A stretch of DNA of 64,000 nt from Botryllus schlosseri (Eukaryota). Where the stretch lies: the NCBI GenBank assembly GCA_051294905.1, contig CM119382.1:25916001-25980000 (forward strand). The letters are read 5' to 3'. A program made the position numbers and the translations under genes. Below the pieces are notes generated by a model that did not search any database, was not told the origin of the DNA, and saw nothing but the letters and a program-made list of their open reading frames with translations. Shown here piece by piece: positions 3,765-41,200 of this stretch (within the stretch, counting starts at the first letter, position 1; each line of letters begins with the position of its first letter).

Positions 3765-4492
3765 GGGTACCAACGGTGCATCTTTGTTCACAATATATTC
3801 CAGTGGTGTGCCTTGAAGCTCATTCAGATGTCCGATTTGTCGAATGAACAGTTCTCCAGGTGCAGATGTCCTAAGATTAGTTATGTTCGGTAGCGTATTA
3901 GAAAGGTGAAGGCTCCAGATATAGTAAAATTTACCTTAAGGCAGACGGAGTAGATGGGTTGCGATATCGATCAACAGATGGCTTGGCAATCACGATTGAG
4001 CTCACTGGTGCCGGCTGAATTTTTTCTCCACGTGGAACATTCCATGATTGCGGCATGCTTGTGCATGACAAATCCCTTGGAATGTCTTTCAGTCCTTGAA
4101 GCTTCAGGTACTGAATTGTCTTTATTAATGCATATGCATGAGAGCATATATCAGAACCAAGTCTGAAAAGAAATCAACAATATCTATTGCAAGATTCTCT
4201 GAAGAAACGATAGTTTTGATACTTACCCTGCCTTACAAGTGCAAGATGAATCAATAATGGATTTTCTAAAAACTTTGATTTCCATCGAATGTGGCACCTC
4301 ACTTTTCCGCATACTGCGATAACATCGCCCGCTCACCAGAATATTGCTTCCACAATAAGAGTGGATTGTCTCCTCAATCTTTATGCCCAAATCGTGTACA
4401 TAGCACTCCATGAAATACTTCGTAGCTTTTACCGCGGCGTTAGAAGAAAATGTTATACCACTCAAATCAAAAAAATCTGGTAGCATCTCCAT
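3765..4492 (-). pseudogene. Second spliced SWIM zinc-finger gene (ISL2EU-like accessory ORF), 3'-truncated
   Basis: Exons 4492-4227, 4162-3935 and 3870-about 3765, with canonical GTAAGT/TTTCAG and GTAAAT/CTTAG sites. The joined frame gives SSCTCKAG-LGSDICSHAYAL...LSCTSMPQSWNVPRG. Confidence 0.8.
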
Positions 4493-5609
4493 AGCTTCTA
4501 ATCAAATCAATGTAAATCATAAATTTCTGAAGACAGTATATGCTTGTATAAGTTGCTTAAGACCTTAGTCCATGAAACTGTCGAAATATGCGGTATCGCA
4601 ATCCTACAGTATACGAATAACAAGAAACAGCTAAGTGTTGGGCTTTATCCGTAATGTTATCAAAATGCATTCATTTTAGGACATATCATACTGCTGCGTA
4701 GTTGCCACCATTGCTGGTTATTTTGGTTTAGAATTACTGTAAATACATACTAGATCTATATTATTACCATTCATCAAAATCAGATATGCCTGATACAATG
4801 TAATTGAACTATGACTTCATCCGTTCACCTTTGACATAAGACTAAGAGCTCACAAATAGTAAGTTTGCCCTATGTTGCGGTTTGTTTACATCACACTGCA
4901 ATCTGATTGGTCCGTGTCAAAGGTCACGTAAGTGTCTATTGTAGCCTAACAAAATACGAGACCAACACACCATCGAAACAATAGCAAAGGCAAAGGCCTA
5001 AAAATATTTTTTATTTACTTAAGTGGCGTTGCACTATAAGGTTTTCATTAATGATTTTCTAATATACAAGTCAACCTAAATGAAAATACACGACACAACA
5101 ACTAACACTAACACATTAGAAAACCACACAAAATGAACATAATTTCTAGCCAAAATGCTAGAATTTACCACAAAATTTCCCATTGGTGGCTCAAAAAAAA
5201 ATCAATAATGGCACTACTGCCCACCAAGGGAGGATATCTAACTTCAAAAACAAGTCCTGGCCACCAATCTGTACAAGTGTGGCTGTTGGTAAAAAAAAAT
5301 CGGTACATATACTTCGATCAGTATATATATATATATTACGATTGAGTAAAATCGACGTTTACTTCAATCTCGCGGTGCACATCTGCTACTCAATAGCTGA
5401 GGGACATATCTGTTGTGTACCGACTATTCGTTCATTGCATGACATATCTAGCTAGTGGGTCACCTGTGGATTGCACATGTGACAGTCGGAGTCGAGCTGA
5501 TGCGATACTGAAGTATGCACGGTATTCTGTAAATAGCAATATCTTAAATGTAAAAGACGCGTGTGTTCACTTGTCTGAATCCTTAGCAAGATAGTAAGGA
5601 TAGAACAAT

Positions 5610-5622
5610 TGGCGACGAGGAT
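5610..5622 (+). promoter_or_regulatory. Primer-binding site, tRNA-Ser(GCU)-like
   Basis: TGGCGACGAGGAT lies 2 nt after the 5' LTR and is complementary to the recalled 3' end of metazoan tRNA-Ser(GCU) (...ATCCTCGTCGCCA). Confidence 0.75.
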
Positions 5623-5687
5623 TAAACTTGCCAAGTCAGTTGGATTACGATTTTGGCGTAAAAGGATTGCTGAAGAACAGAGGAACA

Positions 5688-6602
5688 ATGGCTTCAACGG
5701 GTAAAGGTTTGTCTTACTTCAATACGAATAAAGCTGCTGGATGGCCGAGCTGGATTGATAGATTTGAGATTTGGATGGTGGCAGAGGGTATTACAGACCC
5801 TGGCAAGAAACGTGCAAAACTGCTACATGAGGCCGGCGAAGACGTGTATGACATACTTAAGACCTTGCCTGACATTGAGGGGGACGAGGATGCGTATGTG
5901 AAGACTAAGAAGCAGCTTACGAACTATTTTATCCCGAAGCGGAATAAAATCTTTGAAAGGGGCCTCTTCCGGCAAACAAGACAAAATGCTGGTGAGCCCA
6001 TTCAATCGTACATTACGAGACTGAGGAAATTAGCTGCAACATGTCAGTTTCACAATACCGATGAAGAGATTGTGCAGCAGATAGTCTCTTGTGGTTGCAA
6101 TTCTCGTGTTAGAGAGAAGGCACTGCGACGTGACATGTCTTTGCAGCAATTGTACGACTATGCACAAAGTCTGGAACAATCAAGGCTTCAATCGAGGCGG
6201 ATTGAAAACCACCACCAAGAAGTGCCTGACGCACAGATGCAGGTAAATGCACAAAGTCAAGCAGTGCCATCCGATGGCGAAAGTATGAACATGAACAAGC
6301 AGAGAAATTACGCTCACGCCTGTTTCCGATGTCGCAGTACAAAACATTTGGCTCGGGCGTGCCCGTTCAAAGAAAAAGACTGTTCGTTTTGCGGAAGACG
6401 ACGGCACAGTGAGAAGGCTTGTTGTCGTTCGAAAGATTCGAATCAATCTTATCGAGAAACGGCTGGCTCAAGCAGCCAGAATAAAGTGAAAACGCTTAGC
6501 GCGGAAGACACAAGGAGTGAAGCCTTGGAAGAGTACGACGACAGTGACTTCCTGAATTCTATTGGCAAAGAAGAAAATGCAGATTCTGCTGATTTGGACT
6601 AG
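5688..6602 (+). CDS. gag: Gag with tandem zinc-knuckle-like motifs
   Basis: ATG at 5688. Mag-type gag motifs WPSWIDRFE and KRAKLLHEAG; knuckles CFRCRSTKHLARAC and CSFCGRRRHSEKAC. Ends in a single TAG that is in frame with the protease. Confidence 0.9.
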   Translation: MASTGKGLSYFNTNKAAGWPSWIDRFEIWMVAEGITDPGKKRAKLLHEAGEDVYDILKTLPDIEGDEDAYVKTKKQLTNYFIPKRNKIFERGLFRQTRQNAGEPIQSYITRLRKLAATCQFHNTDEEIVQQIVSCGCNSRVREKALRRDMSLQQLYDYAQSLEQSRLQSRRIENHHQEVPDAQMQVNAQSQAVPSDGESMNMNKQRNYAHACFRCRSTKHLARACPFKEKDCSFCGRRRHSEKACCRSKDSNQSYRETAGSSSQNKVKTLSAEDTRSEALEEYDDSDFLNSIGKEENADSADLD

Positions 6603-9600
6603 GGAGATACAAAGCCCTACTTCATTTATCTGGAAGTCGACAATAAACAGCAAGAGCTTGAATTGGATTGTGGTACTGCTCTCACAGTGTATCCACAGCA
6701 TGTCGTCAGAGAGTTGTGGCCCGATGCCCAACTGAAGGCGTTACCAAGGAAGCTTTATACTTACACGCGGCAACCACTGAAGGTCGCTGGATATATGGAT
6801 GTGTTGGTAAGATATGGAAACTTTGCTGGATATTTGCCATTGATCGTTGTCGACATGCCCAATTTGTCTGAACGACCGTTGTTGGGTAGGAATTGGATAA
6901 TTAGCATCAAACCGAGTTGGATATCGATTGACAAAGTCGATGTACAGGCTGGAAAGTCTGATATGGATGTACAGCAGCTTCTGAAGAAATACCCTGGCAT
7001 ATCAACTCCTGGTTTAGGCTGTGCTAAGACGACAGCTAAGCTGGAGGTTAGTGAATCAGTATTTCCGAAGTTTTTCAAAGCTCTTCCGGTACCGTTGGCT
7101 TTGAAGGCTGCATATGATGCGGAGATTGACCGACAGGTCAAGATGGGAGTACTGAAACCAGTGAAAACTGCAGATTGGGCTGCGCCAGTGGTTACAGTTG
7201 TGAAGTCTGATGGAAAGTCAGTGCGCTTGTGTGGGAGTTATGATCTTACAGTGAACAAAGCAAGTAAACTTGAACAGTATCCGCTACCGAAAGTGGATGA
7301 ACTGCTTACGACATTTGCTGGTGGACAGAAATTCTCTGTTATTGGCTTGAAGGAAGCTTATCCTCAGTTACCCTTGGCAGAAGAGAGTCAGAAGTACACC
7401 GTGATCAATACTGCTAAGGGGCTGTTTTCAACAAATCGTCTGGTATACGGAATATCCAGTGCTCCAGCGATATTTGGAAACACTGCTGAGTGGATTACCC
7501 CATGTGGGAGTTTTTCTGGATGATATTGGAGTCACAGGAAAAGACGATGCTGAGCACATGGCGAATTTGGAAGAAGTATTCAGACGATTGGAAGATGAAG
7601 GCTTGAAGATCAACACAGAGAAGTGTAAATGGATGGCTTCAGAGATCAAGTATCTGGGCTACAGAATTAGCAAAGATGGAGTGAGTCCGACCGAGGATAA
7701 CTTGAAAGCAGTACTTGAGGCGCCAGAGCCTGAAAATGTTGCACAAGTACGATCCTATCTGGGATTTCTGAATTATTATGGAAAGTTCATCAAGAACCTT
7801 TCGACGATTGCAGCACCGTTATACAGGCTGTTACGTGGTGATGTTAAATGGACTTGGGGCAAGGAAGAAAGAGACGCTTTTGCTTCTGAAGTCGCGATTT
7901 CAGACTTCAAGAGCCATAAACATCACGGTTCAATAAACCTTGTATGACCATTGTGACGTAACTGTTATATAGTTCACTGCCGTTCAGTTTCGCCCTCGTT
8001 GCCTGCTTTGTATCAGTTGCTAATATTTCGACTATCAATCTTATTCAATCGTATTTACATCGCAATTCTTATAGATCCTAAAATAATTATTATGAATAGT
8101 CTGATTCGAAATTTGTAACTGTCCTAAAGGAAACACCGTCAAGTAAGTATATATTGATTTATCCGGTACTAAACAATGTGTGTTAATTCGCTGTGTATTA
8201 ATGCTTTCAGAAAACCGTTTTTCGTCTGTGTAAAATAAAATCCAACGAAGCAGGCAGAAACGCGTCATCTTGGGGTGTTGGATAGGACGGTTATATCTCT
8301 ATTGTGTATACGTGGAAGATTCCACCCCTCTTTCGCGGTTACAGCTTCTACAAAGAAGTGCTTGTGTCGAGCGCCAGTCCTCGCTCATTTTGATATGATG
8401 GTGAAGAGGAAAGACCCGTTACGTATGGCTCACGTTCCTTGACAAAGGCGGAACGCAATTATAGTCAGTTGGACCGAGAAGCGTTGGCATTGGTTTTTGC
8501 TGTGAAAAAGTTTCATTCATTCCTTTATGGAAGATCGTTTGCCCTCGTGACTGATCACAAACCTCTATTGGGTTTGCTGGGCAAGGAAAAACCTCTTCCG
8601 GATAACGCATCTCCTCGGTTGATACGATGGAAAGTTCTACTTGATGGGCACGAGTACAAATTGGTTTATAAGCCAGGAGTCCAGCAAGCCAACAGCGATG
8701 CGTTGAGTAGACTGCCGCTGCCGGTGAATGGTAAGACAGAGCCATGTGGAGAAGTCGTGAAGTTGTTGTCAACTATGGATGCTCAGTTGATTAAGGCGGA
8801 AACCTTGCGAGCGTGTACGATGAAAGATCCTGTGTTGTCAGCAGCTGTGTCTTACAGCCAGAGAGGCTGGCCAAAAGCCTCGGACTTGGAATTTGAGTTG
8901 CATCCGTACAGAAATAAAGAAGCAGAACTGAGTGTTCATGAGGGATGTCTGTTTTGGGGAGGCAGAGTCGTTGTTCCTTCTCGATGCAGAAATGAGATGT
9001 TGATTCTGATGCATGATGGTCATCCTGGAATTTGTGCTATGAAGAAGATTGCACGCAGTTACGTGTGGTGGCCTGGATTAGATGCAGATATCGAAGATTT
9101 TGTGAAAAGCTGCAACCAGTGTCAACAGCTGAAACCGCAAGCTGCCAAGGTTACTATGAGCTCATGGTCATACCCTGATGCGGTTTGGGAAAGAATTCAT
9201 TTGGATAATTGTGGTCCGGTAGATGGGAAAATGCTGTTGATAGCAGTGGATGCATACAGCAAATGGCCGGAAGTTTATATAACGAATGGTGTTACCGCAG
9301 AAGAGACTATTAACGGTCTGCGAGATGGTTTTGCGGCATTTGGTCTACCTAAAGTATGTGTTACGGATAACGCAGGCTGTTTTGCTGGATCTGAATTTGC
9401 AGAGTTCATGAAGCTGAATGGGGTAAAGCATCTGTTTTCACCTCCCAGGCACCCTGCTTCTAACTGTCAGGCAGAGTCCATGGTTAAGCAGTGTAAACTT
9501 GGTTTGAAGAAGCAAAAAGCAGCGCCGTTGCAAGTGCGCTTACACCGTTGGCTTTTCCGTTATCGGAATACACCTCACAGTTTTACTGGTCAAACGCCGT

Positions 9601-10136
9601 CGGAAATGATGTATGGTCGAAAAATCAGGACTCACCTGGACTTGCCGGTCTCCTCATCTCGGTTCTCGAAACCAAGTACAATATTTAAACCGAGAGAAAG
9701 TCGGGTTTTCAAAGTTGGAGATCCTGTTTACCTTACTGAGATTGTTGGCTCTCGGTACAAATGGCTGCCTGGTACAGTTATGGCATGTGAAGGTCAATGT
9801 TGCAGGATTAAACTGAAAGATGGAAGATTTTTCAGACGACATTTGGATCATATTCGACCTCGCTATACAGTCGAAGAAGAACAAGTTGTTCGTGACGAAA
9901 TTGAAATGGAAGACATTCCAGAACCGGTAGTGGAAAATGCAGAGAGAAGTGACGAGTCTACTCCATTGGAGTCCAGCAGTTCGAGTGAGGAGAGGCCTGT
10001 TCCTGTTCCTACCGCGGATCGTGAGATTGAAATGATGAATGACGATGTGCGAGGATCTCCTTCATCTACTGGTGGGAGTTCTACAGTTACGAGATCGGGC
10101 AGGATCTGTAAACCTCCTGAAAGACTGAATCTCTGA
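6603..10136 (+). pseudogene. pol: pol (protease, RT, RNase H, integrase), disrupted
   Basis: Protease LELDCGTA; RT FLDD; integrase HDGH..C..C, HLDNCG, VTDNAG, QAES. Lesions: frameshift near 7475, solo LTR at 7887-8343, RNase H DAS segment missing near 8395. Confidence 0.92.
7887..8343. mobile_element. Solo LTR of an unrelated LTR retrotransposon
   Basis: 457 bp, TG...CA ends (TGAAGTCGCGA...TCGCGGTTACA), 5-bp TSD GCTTC at 7882-7886 and 8344-8348. Removing it restores DAFASTKKCLCRAPVLAHFD. Confidence 0.85.
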
Positions 10137-11040
10137 TTTTTGGTCTGGTGACTAAAACCTCGTTGTGTTGGACTTTTTTCTTTTCATATTAGTTTGTCAC
10201 CAGTGAGCGTTTTTTTTTGTGCCTTGTAAATGCTTGCTTGTGTTTTTTTTTTAATTATTCTCTGTTGTTGTGGGTCTCTCATCCATTAAGGGGAGGAGGA
10301 GTTGTTGTGTACCGACTATACGTTCATTGCATGACATATCTAGCTAGTGGGTCACCTGTGGATTGCACATGTGACAGTCGGAGTCGAGCTGATGCGATAC
10401 TGAAGTATGCACGGTATTCTGTAAATAGCAATATCTTAAATGTAAAAGACGCGTGTGTTCACTTGTCTGAATCCTTAGCAAGATAGTAAGGATAGAAAAA
10501 TATCTGCCTGTTGTAGCATATCCAAGGCAGGTTTCAAATGGGGTCTGGCTCTTTTTTTCGGTTGTGGGAAACTGCGTAATATTTGTTTGTATTCCCGGCT
10601 GGTCTGGCTTGAACAGACTTCAGGGGATTTTGCTGTCTCGGTACCATAGCTGCATATTTCGCATGTGGCTACGCATTTTGTTGTCGACGCTGGTCGGTCG
10701 ATTGATTGCTGGAGGGAGCGATATTACGTCGGTCGAGGTCGATTGCCGTAGAGAGCGGGATTGCGTCGGTAATCTGCTGTGGACATGTGGTCATCAGTCA
10801 GCATCCTTTTGCCGCATTGGTAGTGTACGGCCGGCATCAACCGTTTTTCCAATATCTCGTTTCGTTGCGAATCGGTACCGTTGATTTCGTAACACGAAAT
10901 AATGCCAGAATAGTTCCCCAAGTCGATCGAAAACGTTCGACGTCCCTTCCACTATGAGAGCTTGATGCACCGGAAGCGAATGCGAGATCGGTATCGTGCG
11001 AGCAATCTGAAACAGCACACGACACTCACTCGGGGCACCA

Positions 11041-11341
11041 TGCAACAATACATGTCGTAAGTTCCTGGGAGTAGAAGTATAGCTAACCAAAGTATTATAG
11101 GTTTAGCTGGCGGACTACTTAACCTGGAATCCTGTATCCTGGTGAGATCTTCTTAAGACGCAGATAGACGCAAGACATACGAATATATTTCAGACGTTGT
11201 TACAAGTAGGTTTAGCAAATGAGTCTCCTGATTCGAGAGAATCAGTAGTTTTATACTAGAGGCAAATTACTCTAGAACAGGATGTCTTTTGGTTACGAGA
11301 TATACACATTTCATGGTTGGATGATAACAGGAATCTCCTAT
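11041..11341. repeat. Dispersed 300-bp repeat, copy 2
   Basis: Matches 2663-2962. Confidence 0.85.
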
Positions 11342-12939: not shown

Positions 12940-13179
12940 TTGGTACGAGACAGTACAGCGCGTTATTTTCGTGTGATCACAGAAATGGTTGATCTATTAG
13001 CCAGTTTGAAGCCAGAAGAAAGTGACAGTGAGGGCGAAGTCTGTCAAATCTGTAGTAAATTCAACTGTGGGCGGTCGAGGGGTATCAGTTGGGAACAGTG
13101 TGACAATTGGTTCCACGTACTCTGCCTTGAGAGAGAAGGGACAGGCAGTGCAACTGCAAGCTGCAAGTGTCAGAAGTAG
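12940..13179 (+). pseudogene. Degenerate PHD-finger-like exon
   Basis: CQICSK...ISWEQCDNWFHVLC...CKC resembles a C4HC3 PHD finger with a missing ligand. Partly duplicated at about 13370-13460. Confidence 0.5.
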
Positions 13180-13469
13180 ACAGACTATCGTAATAGCGAT
13201 AGATTGAAATAGAGAGGCATTCAACTCAACAAGTTTGAAAGCAGCGGACGTTCTAATAGTGTGGGATTCAAAATAGCAAGTTAGGGTTCGGTTTATCTTG
13301 TATTAGGGTTCAGGTTCAGACCTGAGCAGACCAAATGCGTTTACTTGAAATTTAGATAATGAAACCTATTTTTGGAAACAGTGTGACAACTGATTCCGTG
13401 AACTCTGTCTTGAGAGAGAAGGGACAACCATTGCAGCTGCAAATTGCAAGTGCTAGAAATATGATGGTA

Positions 13470-13720
13470 TCTGAACATCTCAGAAAATTTTGTATTGGTG
13501 GAATAATTTGTGTTGATGATTGTAGATTTGTGTCTACTGTTTTTCTTCAAATGGGGGTCTCTGTACATGTCAGAAAACTTTGTATTGGTGGAGCATTTTG
13601 TGTTGATGATTGTAGTTTTGTGTCTACTGTTATTCTTTAAAGGGTGATCGCTGAACATCTCAGAACACTTTGTATTGGTGGAAGAAATTGTGTTGGTGAT
13701 TTTAGTGCTGTGTCTATTGT
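13470..13720. repeat. About 90-bp tandem repeat x3
   Basis: Unit CTGAACATCTCAGAAAATTTTGTATTGGTGGA...TGTGTCTACTG recurs at about 13470, 13560 and 13650. Confidence 0.85.
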
Positions 13721-14064
13721 ATTTTTAAACAATTGGCTATCAAAGGGGCCCCACTAGGGAGGTTTATTTGATTTAAAAAAATATTTTCGTTGTTAATTTT
13801 TTGGCCTTTTAAAAAAGTATGAAGACGAAATCTGATAAGAAAGTTATTTGGTATATTGATAGCCGGGACCCACATTGCTACTAGTTCAAAGAACCAAGGA
13901 TGCGAAACCCCTTTAACCTACTCGAAATGTATCAAAAGTGCCGAAAACTATTAAAGTCACCCTGATTGACGGTAATTCCGGGTACAGCATTAACGAAGAT
14001 GCGATGCTTTTGCTCCAGAAAGTACTAAAGGTTGTTCGAATGAAAGCTTTATGGTCCGACGAAT

Positions 14065-21944: not shown

Positions 21945-23053
21945 CACTACACAGACTACTAGATTTTCAAAATGCGCGACTAGAACTACTCAATATTTAG
22001 AGCTCGAAGCTAGAACAAGAGCTGCCAACTTTTCCCCATCCGCAACTAGAACTACTCACTTGTTAAAACTCACTACCAGAGCCACTCAATTTTCAAAGTC
22101 TGCAGCTAGAACTACTCAAAAAAACGGTAATTAGTTGACCTTCACCTAACTAAATGAGCAGTTTGTACAAGTCTGACACAAAGTATTTTTGGGCAAATGC
22201 ATGAAATGTATTTTCTAGCAGATGAGAGGAAAGAACAACTGAACAAACAAGTCGCGCCGAGAATGCCAGTCAAGTTTAACATGCTTGGTGTTTAAGAAAA
22301 TCTTTTTGTGTGGTACTCCCTATTGACCTGAAACAGAAACTTCCAGGTAATGAAAGTGAATGCGGATCCAGTCACGGTTCACGAAACCCGACTCTTATTC
22401 ATTTGGCGGAGACAGTACGGCATCTGCTACGATCAGTATGTATTTCTGAGATACTCAGTTGATTTCAACTGGTCAAGCAGATATCATGTATACAAGGATC
22501 TTGGATTTCAGTTGATACCATGCAACAAATGAAGGCGACGTTGGAGAGACTGGAGCCTATCGTGATGGAGATTAGGCAGAGCTTAAGCGGAAAAAGTGAT
22601 AAAAAGAGAACAGAATTGATCCTAGAAGATGTAATATACCAGAGCCACTCGCCACAAAACACGATTTAAAGAAATTTGATGACAAATTGAATGAAATCAC
22701 AGCCTTTTTGCAAGAGATGTGGTGTGTTGAATGTGTTTTATTATTTTTAGAAATTCAGTTAGTCGAAGTTGTCGACCGTATTACTTGGGTCATTTTTAGG
22801 CTTGTTAAGCATCTTTGCGATACAACTGTTCCCTGAACGTAGGAGGTAATGAACGGCCGACTAATTCTTTTCCTATATTGACACTTCGGATATTCCCAGG
22901 CAACAAAATGGGATGCAATCACCAGGCGTATCGTGCGCATTCGATGTCAAAATGATGCTTCAAAAGAAACAATTTTCGCACTTCTGCCGCAGACTCATTA
23001 ACCCGTTGTTGCCGTCCATTAACCCTCTCGCTACTGCAGCTTATAACCGCTAT

Positions 23054-24434
23054 TGTAACAGTGTTGTAGTAAGTTCTTTATTCTTCAAGCTATCAGATCG
23101 CAGCACAGGCGCATGGAAATATGACCAGTAAATACAGCACGTGCACCTCGCACGGCGTACATCCAAGAGAGTGAACGCATCAATAACAACACGCTTCGTC
23201 AATATGCATGACGTCATCACTAGCCACAGATGGCGCCCCGTTACATATACCCCCCTCCAATTTTTAGAGGTAACATGAGGAACATTTACCTCTAAACTAA
23301 AACCAATAACACATCAAATGGAAAACCGAATCAAAGGCAAAAGACACATACAACGTCATGAAGACTATAGGCCAAACAAATAGCTCGCAACGAATAAGAA
23401 CATGAAATTTTAAACAATCTTGTCGATCATCATCAGGTCTGTCGATCCATCCACCCAGTTATGCGAAGCAAGGTCCTCAATTTCTTCACCGCACCATTTG
23501 ATAACGTCTTGTACAGTAATGGAATTCAACTTGCTGACATCAGTACGAACACGGTACGTTTCACCTTCCGTCGGCAACAGAACAAACGGAGCATTATACT
23601 CATTCCAGATTTTCTCGACAACAGCCAACTCTTTCAAGTCCAAGCCCGGGTCAACTTCAATACTATCACACGCCACGACAGACCCACAATTCTCAAGGTG
23701 CGCTAAGGAACCATCCCTCTCAGCTGCCACCTCGGGCTGCATCACAGGCTCACAATCCTCAAGTTGTGCTAAGGAATCATCCCTCTTAGCAGACACATCA
23801 GGCTCCATCACAGGCCTACAGTAATCATGATGCGCTAAGGAATCATCCGTCTTAGCAGACACCATTACAGAGCCACAATCCTCAAGATGTGCTAAGGAAC
23901 CATCCAACTTAGCAGACACCTCGGACAACATAGGATCAGCCAGACCAGGCAAAACAAGTGCACCAACATTTTCATGCTTTCTCGGAACAATTACCGACGA
24001 TTCAACCTCGTTACAGGGTTTAACAAACCGCAATGGATGCGCAGGCGTACCTCCAAAACTTTGCACAATACTCAATACTTGATCGAGAATACTCTTCTGG
24101 GCCTCAACCATGTCGTCAATCCGGCGATGAGCCCGCTTGATCTCTGTACGAATATATTCATGATCCTTACGCAACAAATCCATGACACTTTGTTACCGCT
24201 CACTGACTCTTGAAAGGCTTGAAGACTGGAGTGCTCGCCATTTGTAACAGTGTTGTAGTAAGTTCTTTATTCTTCAAGCTATCAGATCGCAGCACAGGCG
24301 CATGGAAATATGACCAGTAAATACAGCACGTGCACCTCGCACGGCGTACATCCAAGAGAGTGAACGCATCAATAACAACACGCTTCGTCAATATGCATGA
24401 CGTCATCACTAGCCACAGATGGCGCCCCGTTACA
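23054..24434 (-). mobile_element. Miniature LTR retroelement (TRIM-like) with one ORF
   Basis: Identical 192-bp LTRs (23054-23245, 24243-24434) with TGTAAC...GTTACA ends. 4-bp TSD CTAT. On the minus strand: PBS TGGCGAGCACTCCAG and PPT GGAGGGGGG. Confidence 0.95.
23410..24183 (-). CDS. 257-aa protein of unknown function: coiled-coil-like N-terminus and four internal repeats
   Basis: Uninterrupted ORF filling 774 of 997 internal bases. Repeats of VSAKxDxSLAHxxxC are spaced 66, 66 and 57 bp, all preserving frame. Confidence 0.7.
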   Translation of the reverse strand: MDLLRKDHEYIRTEIKRAHRRIDDMVEAQKSILDQVLSIVQSFGGTPAHPLRFVKPCNEVESSVIVPRKHENVGALVLPGLADPMLSEVSAKLDGSLAHLEDCGSVMVSAKTDDSLAHHDYCRPVMEPDVSAKRDDSLAQLEDCEPVMQPEVAAERDGSLAHLENCGSVVACDSIEVDPGLDLKELAVVEKIWNEYNAPFVLLPTEGETYRVRTDVSKLNSITVQDVIKWCGEEIEDLASHNWVDGSTDLMMIDKIV

Positions 24435-25742
24435 CTATTAGCCCTATCGCTGCCTGGATCATTGTTGCTTTCCGGTATATATACTGACATTACTGACCCT
24501 TATGTTGTGGGACATCATAATGTGACAATATATTTCATTATAGTTTTAGTTATAATAAAATCCTCCACGAGCATACATATACAAGATACCGGTCAAATAC
24601 AGACAGACAGCCATTTAAAATGCATAAAACGACATATTGATTTCAGTCGAGATACAGAGAGATCTTCTTTCCAAGACAGGTATAATACAACTATTCCTGC
24701 TCTTGAATTGAAATGCAGACAAAATCTGGTTTATCAAACAAGTCTGTGCCTCGGCGGGAAGAATAGGACCAAGCAACGCGGAGCTACAATCTGCAGCCTA
24801 AACTCACTGTGTGGCACGCTAACCTCATTCAGAGGCCACTTGTGAATGATTTCTCCATAGTTTAGGCTTGGCGTAGTCTCTGATATCTGGCTAATTCCAC
24901 TGGCGTCATATTCGTGTGATGTACTGTCAGCCAGATATCTTTAGCAATGATAATCGGCTGATCATGGCCATTGTCGCTGCACGTTGAACCAATGCTTAGA
25001 GGACGATATTTTATATACTGCTGCCTTCGCCAACGCTGCATTCTTTTCAATTCACCATCAGACTTGTACACTTATATTCGGGCATATAGCAATCAATTCG
25101 TGGCTTCAGTCTCAATCGTAAAATAAAGGCTAAATATAGCAACAAAACAACTCGAAGATTACCTGAAATGAGTATCACAAATTTTAATCAGAAATTATTA
25201 CAAAATATAGTATTTGGCTGAACAGTTGAAACGCCAACCGTTGTACCGAACATCCATGATTGTAAATTCAGTCACATTCATTGCAGACAGAAAATAAACG
25301 GGGTGATCATATACCATTGTCCTTGTTAATGACACATTCAGTCCTTCACAGAACTGTTACAACTCGACGGCGAGTTGGACTGGAGCAATCGCTGCGAGTA
25401 ATGACTGACTGAGTATAATTAACTGGCTAATAAGTCCGGACACAGTAAGTTTCCCCTTGTGTGTATTGCAGAATGTCGATCAAGCAACCCAGACTATATC
25501 ATACCGTTAAAAAATACGCTGGCATATACTCTAAATGTGAAATTACATTAATTAGAGTCAGATTCAGAGCGGCGGAAGCCCTGTTTACAGCACGACCGTT
25601 TTCGGAGAGAATGATTTGTGATCCAGTTTCTTCTCGCGTGCGGCGAGGTGACTCGAGCGTAACCAACCATTGATACGGACAAAAATCCACCGTGACAACC
25701 ATGATTCGTTAATGTACATTGCGCATGAATGTACTGATAAAA

Positions 25743-28560: not shown

Positions 28561-28840
28561 AGTCCAACTTGAAGAGTAAAATTTCATGTAACATCAATCA
28601 GTACTATCGCATGTATATATATATAAATATAAATGATAAATATATATTATACTAATATATAAATATATGTGAGAGGATATATATAAATAAGAAAACGGAA
28701 TAGTCCAACTTGAGAGTAAAATTTCATGTAACATCAATCAGTACTATCGCATGTGTATATATATAAATATAAATGATAAATATATATTATACTAATGTAA
28801 ATATATGTGAGAGGATATATATACATAAGAAAACGGAATT
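28561..28840. repeat. About 141-bp AT-rich tandem duplication
   Basis: AGTCCAACTTGA(A)GAGTAAAATTTCATG begins at 28561 and 28702. Confidence 0.85.
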
Positions 28841-28904: not shown

Positions 28905-30207
28905 TCAATGCCTGGGTACGTAAGCACCCCGCTGGCTATTGAAATACCCAACAAAATCATTTCTAATCTTCCTAGCCTCCTCCGTGTAACGTCTTCCTGT
29001 TCTTGTAAGAGACTGCCAATGCGGTCCGGGTTGCTCTGGAGGTCCCTCGCCTTCATCTGCCGCAAATTCAAGGTGATGTTGATCACCTGAAAGATAATTA
29101 TGCAGGACAGTACATGCTTTGACTACATGGTCAGTATTTGCAGGAGTGATTGCCAACGGCCTGCGAAACATTCTAAACCGGGAGGACAAAATACCAAATG
29201 CATTTTCCACAACATTCCTTGCTCGCGACAGTCTGAAATTAAAATGTCTCCGCTCTGGGCAATTCAATGAGGTACCTGGAAAAGGTCGCATGATATGCCT
29301 CTGCAATGGGAATGCTTCATCTGCGACAAAAACATGAGGACTTGGACTTACACACCCAGGCAAAGGAGCATCTGATGGCAGATCTAATTGGCCAGAGGAC
29401 AAACGTTTTCCGAAATTGGAGTTGCTGAAGCACTTACTATCATTGACCCTTCCATATTGACCTATATCAACAGCAATAAATCTTCTCTGAGCATCAACAA
29501 CTGCCATCAGAACTATACTAAAAGTCTTCTTATAATTAAAATACAGTGACCCAGACTTTGCAGGTTTCTGAAGGACCACATGCTTACCATCAATACTGCC
29601 AATACAATTAGGAAAGTTCCACTTATCTCTGAATTGTGATGCACTCTCTATCCACTGTTCTTGTGTGGGTTCTGGCATGTACTCCGCTGCTAAAGCCTGC
29701 CAGATAGCCACACAAGTCTCCCTGATCAAGTTGACCACTGTTGACTTGCCGCACCGATACGAGAAAGCGATTGTTTGGAATGAATCGCCAGTAGCCATGA
29801 ACCTAAAACAGCAATCGATTCAGATTTTATGTACAGGGCCAGTTCACCACGACTGTAAATTGATTTGAACAAGGTGTATTATAATGTTGGTGTGGATGTG
29901 TCATTTACCTTAGAGTGATTGCCAGTCGTTCATTTGGAGGAATCGGTTTCCTCATCGCTGTCGTCTGCTTCGAAATGAGAGGTCCAACAATCGACAGCAG
30001 CTCGTCGAACTTCTCGGGCGTCATGCGAAAATATGTAAAGAAGTCAGCAGGTCTTTCATATCTCATTTCCTGCGTAAGCCTATACTCTCCCAGCTGATCT
30101 CTTCTCTGAAGAATGGGGTGAACCCAGCATTCACGTCTTTTCTTCTGTTTCTTTTTCCTCCTTTCATCCTTCTTCAACGCCAAATAAAGCAAACCCAGCA
30201 GGTCCAT
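28905..30207 (-). CDS. Harbinger DDE transposase, two exons, about 398 aa, apparently intact
   Basis: Exon 1 30207-29909; intron 29908-29803 (GTAAAT...TTTTAG); exon 2 29802-28905. The junction reads LAITLR-FMATGDSF. Catalytic IDGKH, VADEAF and VVENAFG are present. Confidence 0.9.
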
Positions 30208-33200
30208 TTGGCTGCTTACCCCAGCCAAATCACCCTGCCTTCGAACAATACTCATCCTTTTCAGCGAATGTTGCTTTCCCACTACAGAATACTATGTCCA
30301 GTGCAAATCGCAAACGCCGAGAACAACGATTGCTTTAGTTTTCGCGCGAAAGTGGCTTTGGCCTCCAGAGCGACAACTTGCGGAACAGCGCTAACATCTA
30401 TTCTCACTTTTCGTTCAGCGATGACGTAATCTCTCGTTTTGGCCAATTTAGTGAGAGAGTGAGACTCGTACGCGCGTACGATTTTACGCAAATGTGACTG
30501 AGGCTTCAGGGGTACCGACACTCTTCTGCGGTTTAGCATTAAAATATCAACGGACCGGTAGTACGCATTACGTTCAGACTTCAGAGCACTAAAAACTTGA
30601 CCAAGTACCACGCTGTTCGCTGCCGCCAATGTGACATTTGAGGCCACGGGAAACTATATATATTTGTATCAAGTCCTATTTCAAAAGCCTAACGCAAACA
30701 TGCAGTTAATGTGACTGAAATGCTATTCGAAACACCATTTGACCATCAATACACATCTAAGCAAGTATGTAGAAAATTTCAATAATAGCCCGAAATATCT
30801 CTTGCTCAACTTATCTCAACAAAGAACTTCGTTCATATTTCCTTCCATAGCTATAATCTCGGAAATACAATTCGCCGGTATGTACGGAATATAATTCAAA
30901 CTCAGTGTGCAGCGGTAAACAAGTAAACAACATCCGATTACTTAGGACATCACAATCACTCCACGCTCAAGTGCTCACGAACCAGGCAAAGCTAGGCAGA
31001 AGAATCGCTACGGTGAAGCCCCGTGATAATCAAGCGCATTTAAATTGGTTAATAACGCTGACACCAATCTTTCTGATCGACCGATGGAAAGGAGAACAAT
31101 TGATATTCTGAAATCGAGAGCGATCAGTTTTTGTACATCAAAGGTGCCGCCTCGCTGTAGTGTCAAAACGGTTGAGTTCTCTTCTCTCCTGCACTTTCTT
31201 CGCCTAGTTCGGCATTGAATGCACACACGTTTGTTGACTGGGTTTGCACTCAGTACCGTACCGCGGCGACAGTATCGGACAGTCAGCAAGAACCATGATG
31301 AAGAAAGTCGCCTGTGCTGGTGTCTGGAGTCAATATAGCAGAGTTGGAAAGACGCTTTTATCAACCTCGATTTAAACAAGATTGTACAATTATGCATTTA
31401 TTAGTGAGTTTTATACTCAAATAAATGATTAAGCTGTATATAAAGCAACGAAAGACTTAACCGAAACTTGCACTTGTCACTACCTGCACTTGTCACTACC
31501 TTCAACTCCAGCGAGTTGACACAAAAGTCCGTCGAAGTGCACCGTCAAGTTGGTGTTTCTGCCCCCTGGTGGTGATATCGCTCACGTTGTGCACCACTGG
31601 TCTAGATTGTGAAGCGGCGACCTTCCAGAAAGTAGCGGAATTTTCTTGTGATCAGATGAAGCGTCAATAGTGAGGCGGTTTAGCCCAGATATTCAAAAGG
31701 ATTGTGCATTTTGTGATACAAGCACCAAATTTGGCACACATGTTTATTAACATGTTGCGAACATTTTCAGATATTGAGCCACTCGGAATTCTCTCCTTAT
31801 GTCCGCCAGATTGGATTTCCAAATGGTCGCCATTTGAAATCTACATTTGCGATTATGTCTGGGTCAAATGCTACTATTGACTTTATTTTGGTATCTAAAT
31901 GTATGTTTTTTGGATCAAGGAATCCAATGGTAACAATCTGCAATGCGTATTTTTACCAATGTGCCGCCATATTGGATTTGAAAATGGCGGCTTCACATTA
32001 CATGGCCACTTATCGATCTACATTTGTCGTTATTATAGTCTAATGACTCAATTCTGGTGGTGGTGGTGGTGGTAGAGTAGTTGTTGTAGTGGTAGCTGTA
32101 GTGCAGTGACGATAACAGAAATGTTACTTTGTGTCATTCCGGGTTCATAGTGATGCATGCATGTCTGTAAACTGACGGTGCTAGCTGATATTAATCTGAA
32201 GACAGTTCTACTATGCCCAAGAGGTTCAGACTAGCTCCTTCTGAGGGAACTTCACCATCAACATCACCGCACCTCACCTCAACTGACTGGAGTTTATTCC
32301 TCATATGTCAGAAGGACAAGGCGGAGACACTGACCAAAGCCGACCCGACCAATCAAAGAGAAAAGACATTGGTAATGGGTGCAGTTCACTCGCAGAGAAC
32401 TTGATCAAATTCAGTGAACTTGGAGAGCTTCCAGGATCATTTCAGTTGGAACGACTCGATGATTGTCATGGCATTGAAGCTGCGATGGTTGCACACGGTG
32501 CACAATATCACCACACGTGCAGGCTCCAGTACAACAACACCAAACTGCAGAGGGCACAAAAAAGAGCACTCAGGAAAGAAGGTCAAAGCGACGAGGAACA
32601 ATCTGTATGCAAACGTACCAGGGGATATTCTCGTTTATCGGTTACAGAAAAGGTCCCAGAAGCTTATTTCTTCTGTGCACAACCTGCTAAGGCTAACAGT
32701 CTTCGAAAAACAGCCACCGTATGCTAGAGTCATCTGCCCCACGTCGCTGCTTCCACTCTTCCTGGAAAGTGCCCACACTGTGGCCATGATCCGGCATTCA
32801 ATGGACATTGTGAAGAAAGCTGTAGAACACCTGAATCCTGGACAGACACCAGTGGTCACCTTGGATCAGCCACTGTTTGCTTTGGCTAAGCAGATACAGT
32901 GGAAGTGGCCAGAGAGTTATGGTGAAGACCACATGCTGGTGATGTTTGGTGGTCTCCACATTGAGATGACGGCACTGAAAACACTGGGGAACTGGCTGCA
33001 AGGGAGTGGTTGGGTGCAAGCACTTGTGCAAGGTGAGATAGGGACAGCAGACTCATTCATGCGAGCATCGCATGTGTTGCGCACAAGAAGAGCACATCAA
33101 GTAACTGCAACAGCACTGTACATCCTGCAACACCATGCCAACAACCACTACTGTCTGGGAGAAACCAGGGATGCAGAGGACCTTCCCGCGTTTGAAGACT

Positions 33201-33900
33201 GGTGTCGCGAGAGACGAGGCAACATCCCCCAGTTTCGCTACTGGGCAACTGTGCTGGAAACAGAACTGTTGGTTCTAGTGTATGTGCGTTCTCTCAGGCA
33301 GGGATCGTTGACGATGTACCTTGATGCTCTGACAGAGCTAGTCATCTGGTTCCACTCACTAGATCATACCCACTATGCTAGGTGGATACCAGTGCACCGG
33401 AAGGACATGGCCGAACTCACTACCAAACACCCAGACGTAGCCAGGAAATTCAGTGAAGGCCATTTCACAGTTCAGAAAACACAGATACTGTTCTCTTCAA
33501 TCCCGATTGACCAGACACATGAGCAAAATAATGCCTGCATAAAGGAGACGGTGACGCAGTTGGGCTCACTAACAACTCTAGTGTCCTTCGTCGCTGGATG
33601 GTTGCGGGACCAGAAGTTGCTAGGGTGATAGAAGAATTCCAGGACGGGAACCAATGCTGGAGACGGCAAACAGCAGACACACGTCATCACGATCAGACGC
33701 CAAGTGCACAGGCCTCATTTGTGAAAGATGTTCGCTCTCTCGTCGGTGTCATAGAGGAGATGGGCAACCCATTCGAGGAGGTGAGTCAGGATCTAGTCGT
33801 ACTGGACACAAAGGACATCGCAGGTCCTGCTGCCGTGGAGACCGTGATGAATGCCAAGAGGATTGGCCAAGAGCAGTTCGAGGCTTTCAACAGAGAGTGT

Positions 33901-34176
33901 TTGTTTGTTTTTTGGGGTATTCATGGTGTTTCTCGACTACTATGGTCATTTACACCAGGCCGATATTCTTATTGTTTTCCGTAACTGCCGACTTATAGCA
34001 CGACCCACCTCTAGGCTTTTGTTAGACACAGCTGACGCGGATGAGGTGGCGAGGAGGAGCCTAGGTAAACCTCCAACACTTAGGTATCGGAATTCGGAAG
34101 TCGACCTCGGTCGGACTCGAACCCGCACCCATTGGTGTTGCAGCCGCGGATTATACCACTGCGCTATCTCGCCACG
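33901..34176 (-). mobile_element. tRNA-derived SINE
   Basis: 13-bp TSD CAACAGAGAGTGT at 33888-33900 and 34177-34189. A box TAGCGCAGTGG, B box GGTTCGAGTCC, (AAAC)n-like tail. Confidence 0.9.
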
Positions 34177-35167
34177 CAACAGAGAGTGTCTGTTGGACAG
34201 AACAAAGGCAGTGGACGACCCCATTCCTCGTAACAAGCTGAAGGTGTTCAACACTTCAACTCCAAGAAACCAGAGCAAAGGTCAGCAACAGCTCACCTCT
34301 GTCAAGAATGACCGTGAACTCTTCGCACGCCTGTACATTAGCTGCCAGACGAGGGATGGAGACCTTGAGGAGTTCTTTCGTCACGAGAACCAGGCATGTC
34401 CTCCTGCACTGTCTGCCGGTGGAAACCTCTTCACTGGTACCAAGAATGATCTCATTACTTGCTTGGAAGAAGTCTCCGACCCCAAGACAGAGACTCCTGT
34501 CACTACCTGTATAGTGCTTGATGGAGCGGCCATAGTCCAGATGCTGAATCCGGCTGCATTAAAGATCTTTGAAGAGTATGCACATCAGATCTTCATCACA
34601 TATATGTCTACGAAGCTGCAAACAGTGTCACGCCTGGATCTGGTCTGGGATACTTACCTTGCTGATTCATTGAAAGGTAGTACACGTGCAAACCGGGGAC
34701 AAGGTGTGCGGAGACGTGTGGTGGCCGCCGCATCCACACCAGGAAACTGGCAAAATTTCCTACGAGTGGACAGCAACAAGACCGAGCTGTTCAAGTTCCT
34801 GTCAGCAGCTCTCGTGGAATGGTTTGAACAGGAAGACAAGCAACTGGTCATTACTGATGGAGAGTCAGTGGTCAGCAAGCCACTACTACCAGATCTGACC
34901 TCACTGGCCCCTTGCAACCATGAAGAGGCTGACAGTCGGATGTTGCTGCATGCAGCCAAGCATGGACACCACTCAATAGTCATCCGGACTGTAGACACCG
35001 ATGTTGTGGTACTGGAAGTGATCGTGGTACAGGAGTTGCAACCAGAAGAAGAACTGTGGCTGGCATTAGGAGCAGGTCAAAGATTCCGATACCTAGCAGC
35101 ACACGAAATTGCAGCTGGACTGGGACCAGAAAAGGCTCGTGCACTGCCAATGTTCCACGCTCTAACT

Positions 35168-36465
35168 CAGCGGTTCTCAACCTTTTTTTGACACGCGCCC
35201 CCCTTGGCGATGGTCAAAAAAATCGCGCCCCCTGACCCCCCTTACATTTATCGTCATGTCAAAAAGAGCATATAATCTAATACAGAGGTGGGCAACCTTC
35301 TTGCTAATCATGGCCGCATTTCGATTACTTATGTAGCCTAAGGCCGCAATGAACGATCTGGACGCAAAATACCTATGGTAAACTGTCCATATCCATTCTC
35401 GGTGAACTTGGGACTATTCTACTTTTCACAACGGCCTATTGTACGCACCGAAATCGCGAGTGGCAATGTTATGAATAGTTGCTGGGAGTGCATATTGTCG
35501 CGCAGAGCGCGAAACTTTTTCAGAGCGACGAATGAATTGTTATTTCTTGAGGATCCCCATTCCTGCTCCAAGTAAGAAGGGCGCTACTGCATTAAAATCG
35601 AAAAATGAAGTCTTATTGAATTGCGCGGAGCGCAGAGAAAATTTCAAGATTAAATAAAATCTCTCGAAAATTCGGGAGTGAATTCGTAATTACAATTTGC
35701 ATGTCTACGGCTACCAACACATACTAATTGAATTAGGCGTCGACGGCCGCACCAATTCCCTTCTACGGCCGCATGCGGCCGTACGGGCTGCCCACCCCTG
35801 ATCTAATAGTACACATGAGGTATATTTTACGCCAATTTTGAATCCGCATTCAAGTTGTTTAGTATTTTACATTGCTGACAAACTTCCCCAAACTTGTTTG
35901 AGAATAACAAATAAAAAAAACATTGAAAAGGATATCAAATAATTTCAAGGTAGGTTGCACTGAGACTAATCCTGATGCTGGTAGTGACTACAGAGAGCAC
36001 GCCGTCGTTCTGTCCTGCCATGCTAAATTTGATCAGTTTTGGAAATGAATAAAATTGTGTTGATTTATAGCCAATTTGAAGGCGAAACCGGGCAACCTAT
36101 ATTGCATCTAAGTCTGTCTAAGCAGTGCAGTTCGCCAGCTATCAACAACAGCTACCTAGCGCACAGAGATTTAGGCTACTGCCAAAACTATGAAGTAATG
36201 AATGACTTGCACGTAGGAATTTCTCTAAATCTTCAGAGAATATCAAAAATTTGCTCAAATGAAGTTGAAGTCAGCCTATACTCCGTTGGGCCGACTGCTG
36301 CAGTTTGAGTTTGGCAAGCTTTCTAGAATACGAATTAAGTTTAATCTTCAACAATCGTCTCTTCAGAATGGTTGTGAAACACTATTAGTCACAATTTATA
36401 ACGACATTGACAAAATTGACAAAAATTTCTCGCGCCCCCCCCCCCCCCCAGGTTGAGAACCCCTG
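35168..36465. mobile_element. hAT-type MITE
   Basis: TIR CAGCGGTTCTCAAC...GTTGAGAACCCCTG. TSD CTCTAACT at 35160-35167 and 36466-36473. Confidence 0.92.
35283..35800. mobile_element. hAT-type MITE nested in the previous MITE
   Basis: TIR CAGAGGTGGGCAAC...GCTGCCCACCCCTG. TSD ATCTAATA at 35275-35282 and 35801-35808. Confidence 0.9.
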
Positions 36466-40485: not shown

Positions 40486-41200
40486 CAGACATGGGGTAAT
40501 CGCGATTAGTAATCGTAATCGATTACAGCATTTTCAAGTAATCGTAATCGCAATCGATTACATTCGAAAAAATTCCGAAGTAATCGTAATCGTAATCGAC
40601 TACTTCCCATATCTAATCGATTTCTTTGTGAAAGAACGATTACTTTTTATTCGTACAAGGACTATGACATAAACTGAACATTCGTGAACAAGGAAGATGT
40701 ATTATAGCAGGTTGATGATAATACAAACGTCTGATTTTTTAAATGCCATTGCTCATTATTACGTCAGAAGTAGCCTATTAGCGTTGCTAGTCACTGCGTA
40801 AGAAGTATCCACAGTAAAGAGACATTCGATGTACGTCACGTACATTCGTGTGATTGTAAGAACACCCGCCGTGCTGTATATCAGGTTATTAACCCGTTCC
40901 ACACGCCAGTACCCCGCAGCAGGAAAATTAATCACCACTCTACCTAGTAACTTGTGTATTGATGTTTGGTTTTGCAAACGCAGTTTGACAGTTGCTGCTT
41001 GGCGAGCAGTAGGCCTATGTAGTACGTATGTGCGTACACCGGACAGAGCTTTGAAATTTTGCACTCGTCAAATAAAACATTACGGTTTCCACAACGAAGC
41101 AATAAAAATCAACAGTTGCTGATATATATCACAACCGAGCCGTTTTTGCCGTTTCTCGTAGCGGCAGCTTGCAGTACATTATCTGTATTAAGTTGAAGGC
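40486..41200. mobile_element. Second, inverted copy of the GTAATCGATTAC hAT family; other end not found
   Basis: Starts CAGACATGGGGTAATCGCG and is the reverse complement of about 20298-19930 and 18790-18400. Confidence 0.75.

What the first reader, a model, noticed from the sequence alone, without database searches (positions are those of the whole stretch)
23054..24434. Very young miniature LTR element carrying one intact, non-canonical repeat-containing ORF
Seen: a 1381-bp element with 100% identical 192-bp LTRs, a 4-bp TSD, a PBS and a PPT. About 78% of its interior is one open 257-aa frame: an amphipathic/coiled-coil-like N-terminus, then four His/Cys/acidic repeats (VSAKxDxSLAHxxxC) whose spacings of 66, 66 and 57 bp all keep frame. 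There is no RT, integrase, protease or zinc knuckle. Known: TRIMs and other mini-LTR elements are usually non-coding. Inference: the frame is maintained by selection, and the element may encode a helper-dependent capsid-like or accessory protein that parasitises an autonomous gypsy family using a tRNA-Arg-like primer and 4-bp TSDs.
Basis: partly seen in the sequence, partly recalled or inferred. Interest (0 to 1): 0.78.

Follow-up and report, generated by a model that had tools for sequence, protein, structure and literature searches.

The report
Small LTR retrotransposon with orphan ORF
This is a real, recently inserted 1.4-kb LTR retrotransposon that has none of the replication enzymes but carries one intact 257-codon gene with no detectable relatives, so it is a slightly unusual member of an ordinary class of genomic parasite, and the gene's role could not be tested here.

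Summary
Window 23054-24434 is a minus-strand LTR retrotransposon with these features:
- two identical 192-bp LTRs with TG..CA ends
- a 4-bp target-site duplication (CTAT)
- a tRNA-type primer binding site 2 nt from one LTR, and a G-rich polypurine tract 4 nt from the other
- one sense ORF of 257 aa filling 78% of the interior

The ORF looks like true coding sequence. It has codon-position bias, and no shuffle produced an equally long open frame. It has a six-heptad coiled-coil N-terminus and four in-frame 19-22-aa repeats. It contains no RT, IN, PR or zinc knuckle, so the element cannot move on its own.

The ORF has no relative in Pfam, NCBIfam, PDB, a 5.8-billion-cluster word search, or a full phmmer scan of 1.84 billion representatives. 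DNA and protein scans of three contig collections also found nothing. The source genome appears to be missing from these collections, so copy number, ORF retention, dN/dS across copies and the helper element could not be tested.

The diverged internal repeats give pN/pS of about 0.7, so selection is not shown. Nothing supports a capsid fold. The two Gypsy elements in the window are not the helper.

Verdict: a TRIM-sized, coding, non-autonomous LTR element of modest interest.

The parts
23050..23053 (.). Target-site duplication, copy 1 (CTAT)
   Evidence: Read directly. It is identical to 24435-24438.
23054..23245 (-). 3' LTR in element orientation, 192 bp, TGTAAC...GTTACA ends
   Evidence: 100% identical to 24243-24434. 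There is no third copy in the window.
23250..23265 (-). Polypurine tract. The core GGAGGGGGG is at 23258-23250, within the purine-rich 16-mer AAAAATTGGAGGGGGG, 4 nt (TATA) upstream of the 3' LTR.
   Evidence: A 3-nt spacer is documented for ta-TRIM (PMC4558846).
23266..23293 (-). 8-bp stem / 12-nt loop hairpin just upstream of the PPT, in the 164-nt 3' untranslated interior (23246-23409)
   Evidence: The hairpin is present in both the MFE and centroid folds. The whole 3' region does not fold better than shuffles (z = -0.69).
23410..24183 (-). Single intact ORF: 257 aa plus stop, ATG with a purine at -3 and G at +4
   Evidence: Codon-position bias. No homologues.
24052..24180 (-). Codons 2-44: long amphipathic helix with six heptads (coiled-coil-like)
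   Evidence: AF2 pLDDT 75-95 over residues 1-40. Heptad test: 11/13 a/d positions hydrophobic, 3/5000 shuffles reach this.
23674..23919 (-). Four in-frame tandem repeat units (19, 22, 22 and 19+ aa) with the core motif VSAK.D.SLAH...C. Cys is invariant. His is replaced by Gln in unit 3.
   Evidence: (D2). Units are 75-86% identical at nucleotide level and 47-74% at amino-acid level.
23413..23658 (-). Codons 176-257: acidic C-terminal region with a weakly predicted helix-strand-strand-helix pattern
   Evidence: pLDDT 44, so the fold is not reliable. Charge count.
24184..24242 (-). 59-nt leader between the 5' LTR and the ORF start. It holds a 13-codon upstream ORF (24241-24200) whose ATG overlaps the PBS.
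24228..24240 (-). Primer binding site TGGCGAGCACTCC, 2 nt after the 5' LTR
   Evidence: The tRNA identity was not tested because the window has no tRNA gene.
24243..24434 (-). 5' LTR in element orientation. Motifs by LTR position: TGACGTCA at 30-37 (24405-24398), TATTTA at 112-117 (24323-24318), AATAAA at 164-169 (24271-24266).
   Evidence: The promoter and poly(A) roles are inferred from the motifs only.
24435..24438 (.). Target-site duplication, copy 2 (CTAT)

Best explanation
Shown: 23054-24434 is a recently inserted, minus-strand, non-autonomous LTR retrotransposon of TRIM size. It has identical 192-bp LTRs, a 4-bp TSD, a PBS and a PPT, and it has no RT, RNase H, integrase or protease.

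Inferred mechanism:
- A transcript starts downstream of the TATA-like motif in the 5' LTR and ends after the AATAAA in the 3' LTR.
- A host tRNA anneals to the PBS.
- Reverse transcription and integration are done in trans by an autonomous LTR element that was not seen. Its integrase makes 4-bp staggered cuts.

Inferred for the ORF: it sits exactly where gag sits, starting 59 nt after the LTR, sense to the element, and ending 164 nt before the 3' LTR (155 nt before the PPT core). It is most likely a fast-evolving, lineage-restricted gag-position protein inherited from the element's transposon ancestor, possibly rearranged. Its coiled-coil N-terminus would multimerise it. The acidic Cys/His repeats and the small C-terminal region would tether its own RNA, or the helper's particle, so that the short RNA is co-packaged.

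Whether the protein is still needed is open.
For: Structure:
- LTR identity, TG..CA ends, TSD, PBS and PPT.
- The ORF is sense to the PBS-to-PPT direction and fills 78% of the interior.

Coding signature:
- G1 is 41%, and third positions are T-rich and C-poor, as in the other transposon genes of this window.
- 0 of 2000 shuffles give so long an open frame.

Non-autonomy: no enzymatic domain and no zinc knuckle.

Coiled coil.

Age of the coding sequence: the repeat units differ by 14-25% while the LTRs are identical. The coding sequence is therefore much older than this insertion and stayed open, with a 9-nt in-frame length difference between units.

Control: the genuine gag-protease ORF of the Gypsy at 51281-57358 also has no Pfam hit at E<=1. 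A Pfam blank therefore does not exclude a gag origin.

Precedent: PBS and PPT spacers of 2-4 nt are known in animal TRIMs (PMC4558846).
Against: - There is no sequence similarity to any gag or gag-pol among 1.84 billion representatives.
- There is no CA-like all-helical prediction and no nucleic-acid-binding knuckle.
- pN/pS among the repeats is 0.71, and substitution-only neutral simulations leave 9-28% of copies open. Current selection is therefore unproven.
- Only one copy is known and no helper was identified.
- An upstream ORF overlaps the PBS and could damp translation.
Confidence: 0.5

Rival explanations
1. The ORF is a functionless in-frame deletion chimera. Template switching during reverse transcription would have joined the start of a helper's gag to a distal, poorly conserved piece such as a gag or integrase tail or env. 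On this view the frame is intact only because the copy is young.
For: - Identical LTRs mean there has been no time for decay.
- pN/pS among the repeats is about 0.7.
- Neutral simulation leaves 9-28% of copies open.
- The protein is modular and mostly predicted as disordered.
- Deletion derivatives are the usual origin of non-autonomous LTR elements (PMC6022998, PMC13570524).
Against: - No part of the ORF matches any gag-pol in the big search, so conserved pol segments are excluded.
- The ORF has clean start and stop codons with untranslated flanks on both sides.
- The repeats diverged by 14-25% without a frameshift. If indels are added at the usual rates (inference, assuming 0.05-0.1 indels per substitution), this becomes unlikely under pure neutrality, at roughly 0.2-2%.
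Confidence: 0.25
2. The interior is a captured cellular coding sequence, transduced or retro-copied into an LTR vector as in maize Bs1 (recalled from general knowledge). It would have no role in transposition.
For: - It is a complete small CDS with its own start, stop and 3' untranslated stretch.
- It bears no resemblance to any transposon protein.
- The architecture of coiled coil, acidic repeats and a small domain is common in cellular proteins.
Against: - No cellular homologue was found either.
- There is no poly(A) remnant before the PPT.
- Third-position usage resembles the transposon genes of the window.
- The ORF starts at the position typical of gag.
Confidence: 0.15
3. It is not a transposon at all. 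On this view a partial tandem duplication (A-B-A) happens to have LTR-like ends.
For: Only one copy was seen. No paralogous empty site exists in the window to prove insertion.
Against: Seven features occur together at the exact repeat boundaries: TG..CA ends, a 6-bp terminal inverted repeat, a 4-bp TSD, TGG 2 nt after one repeat, a 9-nt G-rich purine run 4 nt before the other, an AATAAA near the repeat end, and an ORF in the matching orientation. This is far beyond chance; the TSD and the TG..CA ends are each about 1 in 256.
Confidence: 0.03

Closest known systems
[quoted passage not shown]
   Same: - Total size is about 1.4 kb, within the extended limit of 1.5 kb.
- LTRs fall within the 100-250 bp range.
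- PBS, PPT and TSD are present, and there is no pol, so the element depends on a helper.
- The PBS and PPT sit a few nt away from the LTRs, as in ta-TRIM.
(PMC6934838, PMC4558846, PMC3532108, PMC13570524)
   Different: TRIMs are defined as non-coding. The ta-TRIM interior has no ORF above 120 codons (PMC4558846). Here 78% of the interior is one intact 257-codon ORF with a coding signature.
TR-GAG (terminal-repeat retrotransposon with a GAG domain) and BARE-2-type gag-bearing non-autonomous elements of plants
   Same: It is a non-autonomous LTR element whose only ORF lies in the gag position, which implies trans-mobilisation by a full-length partner (PMC6022998, PMC13570524).
   Different: - No GAG domain is recognisable (Pfam E<=10: none) and there is no zinc knuckle.
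- The element is much shorter than TR-GAGs as I recall them (not checked in the papers read here).
- Those families are described from plants, and the host here is unknown.
LTR elements that carry captured host gene fragments (maize Bs1; recalled from general knowledge, not tested)
   Same: A short LTR vector with a non-transposon-like coding insert.
   Different: No cellular source gene was found, and the ORF is a complete frame in the gag position rather than a patchwork of exons.

Membership tests
LTR retrotransposon (order LTR, class I) | Two direct long terminal repeats ending TG...CA | tested here: met
   192-bp repeats, 100% identical, with TGTAAC...GTTACA ends.
LTR retrotransposon (order LTR, class I) | Target-site duplication of 4-6 bp | tested here: met
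   CTAT on both sides.
LTR retrotransposon (order LTR, class I) | PBS complementary to a tRNA 3' end next to the 5' LTR | tested here: inconclusive
   TGGCGAGCACTCC lies 2 nt after the LTR, so the TGG..CCA logic fits. No host tRNA was available for comparison. The tRNA-Arg assignment rests on memory only.
LTR retrotransposon (order LTR, class I) | Polypurine tract next to the 3' LTR | tested here: met
   GGAGGGGGG lies 4 nt upstream of the 3' LTR.
Autonomous Ty3/Gypsy, BEL/Pao, Copia or ERV element | Encodes RT, RNase H, integrase and protease | tested here: not met
   No Pfam family at E<=10. The 997-bp interior cannot hold them. Superfamily assignment is therefore impossible from this copy.
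TRIM | Total length below 1 kb (strict) or 1.5 kb (extended), with LTRs of 100-250 bp | tested here: met
   1381 bp and 192-bp LTRs. This meets the extended limit only (PMC13570524, PMC6934838).
TRIM | Interior without coding capacity | tested here: not met
   An intact 257-aa ORF with codon-position bias.
TRIM | A multi-copy family in the genome | not testable with these tools
   One copy in the window. The source genome is not in any searchable collection.
TR-GAG | The only ORF carries a recognisable GAG domain | tested here: not met
   No gag family in Pfam at E<=10, no hit in 1.84 billion representatives, and no CCHC knuckle. Caveat: a genuine gag in the same window is also Pfam-blank.
TR-GAG | LTRs, PBS and PPT present, pol absent | tested here: met

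The most novel reading that the evidence does not exclude
A TRIM-sized LTR retrotransposon family that is kept alive by its own lineage-specific protein. That protein would be unrelated to known gag, with a coiled coil plus Cys/His acidic repeats, and would hijack the particles or the RT/IN of an unrelated autonomous element. This would be a new kind of coding hyper-parasite among LTR elements, distinct from both the non-coding TRIMs and the gag-bearing TR-GAGs.
Probability: 0.15. Interest if true: 0.6.

Novelty: new variant of a known kind. Interest (0 to 1): 0.3.

Why it matters
If the ORF proves to be conserved across many copies, it would show that the smallest LTR parasites can keep a private protein rather than relying only on cis-acting RNA signals. 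It would also give a compact, two-component system of mini-element plus helper for studying how non-autonomous retroelements get packaged. If the ORF is not conserved, this is one more deletion derivative, useful only for repeat annotation of this genome.

Tried and rejected
Searches for relatives of the ORF, all empty:
- Pfam at E<=10
- NCBIfam (only a 13-bit chance match)
- PDB sequences (best E = 0.09, chance)
- word search of 5.8 billion clusters
- full phmmer scan of 1.84 billion representatives
- exact-sequence look-up
- back-translated pattern scans of viral, prokaryotic-genome and metagenome contigs

Searches for more copies or a partner, all empty:
- the LTR/PBS junction as exact DNA in metagenome and viral contigs
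- blastn and tblastn of the element and the ORF against the window, which returned only self hits
- PBS and LTR-end patterns in the window

Finding the source genome:
- Exact look-ups of two other window proteins failed.
- The best relative of a window Gypsy pol is only 69% identical and unnamed.
- The host lineage therefore seems unsampled. This weakens the meaning of 'no relatives'.

Structure: AF2 without an alignment gave pLDDT 38 for the whole protein and 44 for the C-terminal 93 aa. No fold search was run because the matches would be meaningless.

RNA families: Rfam gave nothing on the element at E<=1, so the LTR is not derived from a small-RNA gene as in Cassandra-type elements.

Empty site: there is no paralogous empty site in the window, and no ORF of note is interrupted at the insertion point.

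Gypsy elements in the window: both were rejected as helpers because they have 5-bp TSDs and different LTR ends and PBS.

Not done: the third word search was not spent on naming the host, because the tool gives no organism names. The window contains no N stretch, and nothing in it looked human.

Full report
**1. The observation**

- **LTRs.** Two direct repeats, 23054-23245 and 24243-24434, are 100% identical. The tool reports 193 bp because a T happens to precede both copies. The unit bounded by TG and CA is 192 bp, and its ends form a 6-bp perfect inverted repeat (TGTAAC...GTTACA).
- **TSD.** The four bases CTAT flank the element on both sides, at 23050-23053 and 24435-24438.
- **Orientation.** The element lies on the minus strand. 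In that orientation the 5' LTR is followed after 2 nt by TGGCGAGCACTCC (24240-24228), and the 3' LTR is preceded at 4 nt by GGAGGGGGG (23258-23250). In the plus orientation neither signal is present.
- **ORF.** The single long ORF, 24183-23410, is 257 aa and sense to this orientation. It starts 59 nt after the 5' LTR and stops 164 nt before the 3' LTR. It takes 774 of the 997 interior bases.
- **Repeats.** Four tandem units spaced 66, 66 and 57 bp (TRF period 66) translate into VSAK.D.SLAH...C units starting at residues 89, 108, 130 and 152.
- **Copy number.** There is no other copy of the LTR, the interior or the protein anywhere in the 64-kb window.

**2. Is it more than chance?**

The LTR hallmarks all coincide at the exact repeat boundaries. 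They are the TG..CA ends, the terminal inverted repeat, the TSD, TGG just inside one LTR and a G-rich purine run just inside the other. This makes a simple partial duplication very unlikely.

The ORF is not a chance open frame. None of 2000 shuffles of the interior reached 260 open codons (mean 93, maximum 215).

Base composition is strongly periodic: G is 41% at first codon positions, and third positions are T-rich and C-poor. This third-position pattern also appears in the Gypsy, Harbinger and hAT genes of the same window. The interior is therefore coding sequence, or was until recently.

**3. The protein**

- **N-terminus.** AlphaFold2 without an alignment is confident only for one helix, residues 2-44 (pLDDT 75-95). 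That helix has an unbroken heptad pattern over six heptads: 11 of 13 a/d positions are hydrophobic, against 7 of 32 elsewhere. Only 3 of 5000 shuffles match this. A coiled-coil multimerisation module is the one structural statement I consider supported.
- **Middle.** Residues 89-175 are acidic (18 D+E against 6 K+R) and hold the four repeats. Cys is invariant in them. His is replaced by Gln in the third unit, so a metal site is possible but not compelling.
- **C-terminus.** The last 80 or so residues give a weak helix-strand-strand-helix prediction at pLDDT 44. That is too poor for a fold search.
- **Missing features.** There is no CCHC knuckle, no Pfam family at E<=10, nothing in NCBIfam and nothing in the PDB.

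**4. Relatives**

None were found in any search:

- the word search over 5.8 billion clusters
- the exhaustive phmmer scan of 1.84 billion representatives, which sees proteins of any length and would have caught a longer gag-pol
- the exact-sequence look-up
- degenerate-pattern scans of viral, prokaryotic-genome and metagenome contigs
- exact-DNA scans for the LTR/PBS junction

This blank has limited meaning, for two reasons.

- The source genome itself seems absent from the collections. Two other intact window proteins have no exact record. The best relative of a window Gypsy pol is only 69% identical, from unnamed assemblies.
- A Pfam blank does not exclude a gag origin. The genuine gag-protease ORF of the Gypsy at 51281-57358 also has no Pfam hit at E<=1. 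The other Gypsy's gag reaches only a sub-threshold Retrotrans_gag match and has two CCHC knuckles.

**5. Selection**

The only internal handle is the four repeat units.

- The units are 75-86% identical at nucleotide level, while the LTRs are 100% identical. The coding sequence is therefore far older than this insertion.
- Pairwise pN/pS ranges from 0.38 to 1.24 and is 0.71 pooled over 19 codons. This is not distinguishable from relaxed constraint.
- In a substitution-only neutral simulation of the whole ORF, 28%, 9% and 3% of copies stay open at 0.05, 0.10 and 0.15 substitutions per site.
- Adding frameshifting indels lowers the neutral survival to roughly 0.2-2%. This is my own estimate, not a tool result, and it assumes 0.05-0.1 indels per substitution. 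The one length difference between units is 9 nt, which is in frame.

My reading is as follows. The frame was probably under coding constraint at some stage after the repeats arose. That stage may have been in a progenitor, either a helper's gag or a cellular gene, rather than in the mini-element. Present-day selection is not shown.

**6. Mechanism and partner**

The LTR carries a palindromic TGACGTCA at positions 30-37, a TATA-like TATTTA at 112-117 and an AATAAA at 164-169 of 192. This fits a short U3-R-U5 layout with a very short U5. It is motif-level inference only.

With no RT, RNase H, integrase or protease, the element must use a helper. The 4-bp TSD shows that the helper's integrase makes 4-bp staggered cuts.

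The two Gypsy elements in the window (5411-10501 and 51281-57358) make 5-bp TSDs (ATATC and GAAAG). They also have different LTR ends and leader sequences, so they are not the helper.

'Gypsy' and 'tRNA-Arg' therefore remain guesses. The window has no tRNA gene. The match of the last 8 nt of the PBS to a metazoan tRNA-Arg(ACG) 3' end is only my recollection, so it is a lead and not a test.

PBS and PPT spacers of a few nt have precedent. In ta-TRIM the PBS lies 4 nt from the LTR and the PPT 3 nt from it (PMC4558846).

**7. Comparison with known kinds**

- **TRIM.** By size and LTR length the element is a TRIM in the extended sense of 1.5 kb or less (PMC13570524, PMC6934838). It fails the non-coding criterion.
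- **TR-GAG.** By having a single gag-position ORF and no pol it works like a TR-GAG or BARE-2-type element (PMC6022998). It fails the recognisable-GAG criterion.
- **Overall.** It is best filed as a coding, TRIM-sized, non-autonomous LTR element with an orphan ORF, which is a new variant of a known kind. Recent work argues that these categories form a continuum and that autonomous ancestry is often untraceable (PMC13570524).

**8. Verdict**

The feature is real and the anatomy was correctly read. The functional story of a selected, capsid-like helper parasite of a Gypsy family is unproven.

My estimates are:

- about 0.5: a transposon-derived gag-position protein, possibly still useful to the element
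- about 0.25: a functionless deletion chimera
- about 0.15: a captured cellular sequence
- about 0.03: not a transposon

Interest is modest (0.3). The decisive test is a copy survey in the source genome, which is simple but not possible with the collections at hand.

The only joined sequence used was the host flanks with the element removed, to inspect the insertion site.

Noticed in passing
window 51281-57358, with flanks 50725-51256 and 57359-57660: A near-intact Gypsy element. It has 183-bp LTRs 99% identical, a 5-bp TSD (GAAAG), a 618-aa gag-protease ORF with no Pfam hit and a 980-aa pol ORF. It sits inside a tandem array of 141-151-bp units that continues on both sides, so it appears to be an insertion into a satellite.
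   Followed up: partly
window 5411-10501 within 2663-11340: A second Gypsy with 199-bp LTRs 99% identical, a 5-bp TSD (ATATC), PBS TGGCGACGAGG, a gag with two CCHC knuckles and a pol broken into several ORFs. It lies between two 300-bp direct repeats that are 97% identical (2663-2962 and 11041-11340). These may be the LTRs of an older element it nested into.
   Followed up: partly
window 28905-29798 (-): An intact 297-aa Harbinger/PIF-type DDE transposase ORF (DDE_Tnp_4, E = 4e-35). The tandem pair of 111-bp repeats at 28573-28823 lies just beside it.
   Followed up: no
window 45220-48387 (-): A hAT-type transposase split into two long ORFs. One has DUF4371 (46807-48387) and the other the hAT dimerisation domain (45220-46491).
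   Followed up: no
window 60446-61363 (+): A fragment of a non-LTR (LINE-type) element with RNase H and zf-RVT domains.
   Followed up: no
window 41157-41404 (-): A short match to eukaryotic LSU rRNA that barely exceeds the Rfam gathering score (51.5 vs 50 bits). It is either an rDNA-derived fragment or a marginal hit.
   Followed up: no
window 3139-3338, 43030-43119, 60190-60274, also 2989-3120 / 42860-42991: A dispersed short repeat at 88-89% identity. The 3139-3228 and 3254-3338 copies face each other as an inverted pair and begin with a TTAACCCGTTAC-like terminus, which resembles a MITE (families D9, D13, D15).
   Followed up: no
window 32414-35191 (+): Two long ORFs (404 and 446 aa) in the most GC-rich stretch of the window (48%), with no Pfam family. 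Their nature is unknown.
   Followed up: no
window 13089-13730 and 22015-22118: Tandem repeats of 90 bp (three copies, 78-87% identical) and of 30 bp (three copies) in the non-coding DNA upstream of the element.
   Followed up: no
window 24200-24241 (-): A 13-codon upstream ORF whose ATG is formed by the base before the PBS plus the PBS TG. It ends 16 nt before the main ATG and could lower translation of the 257-aa ORF.
   Followed up: no
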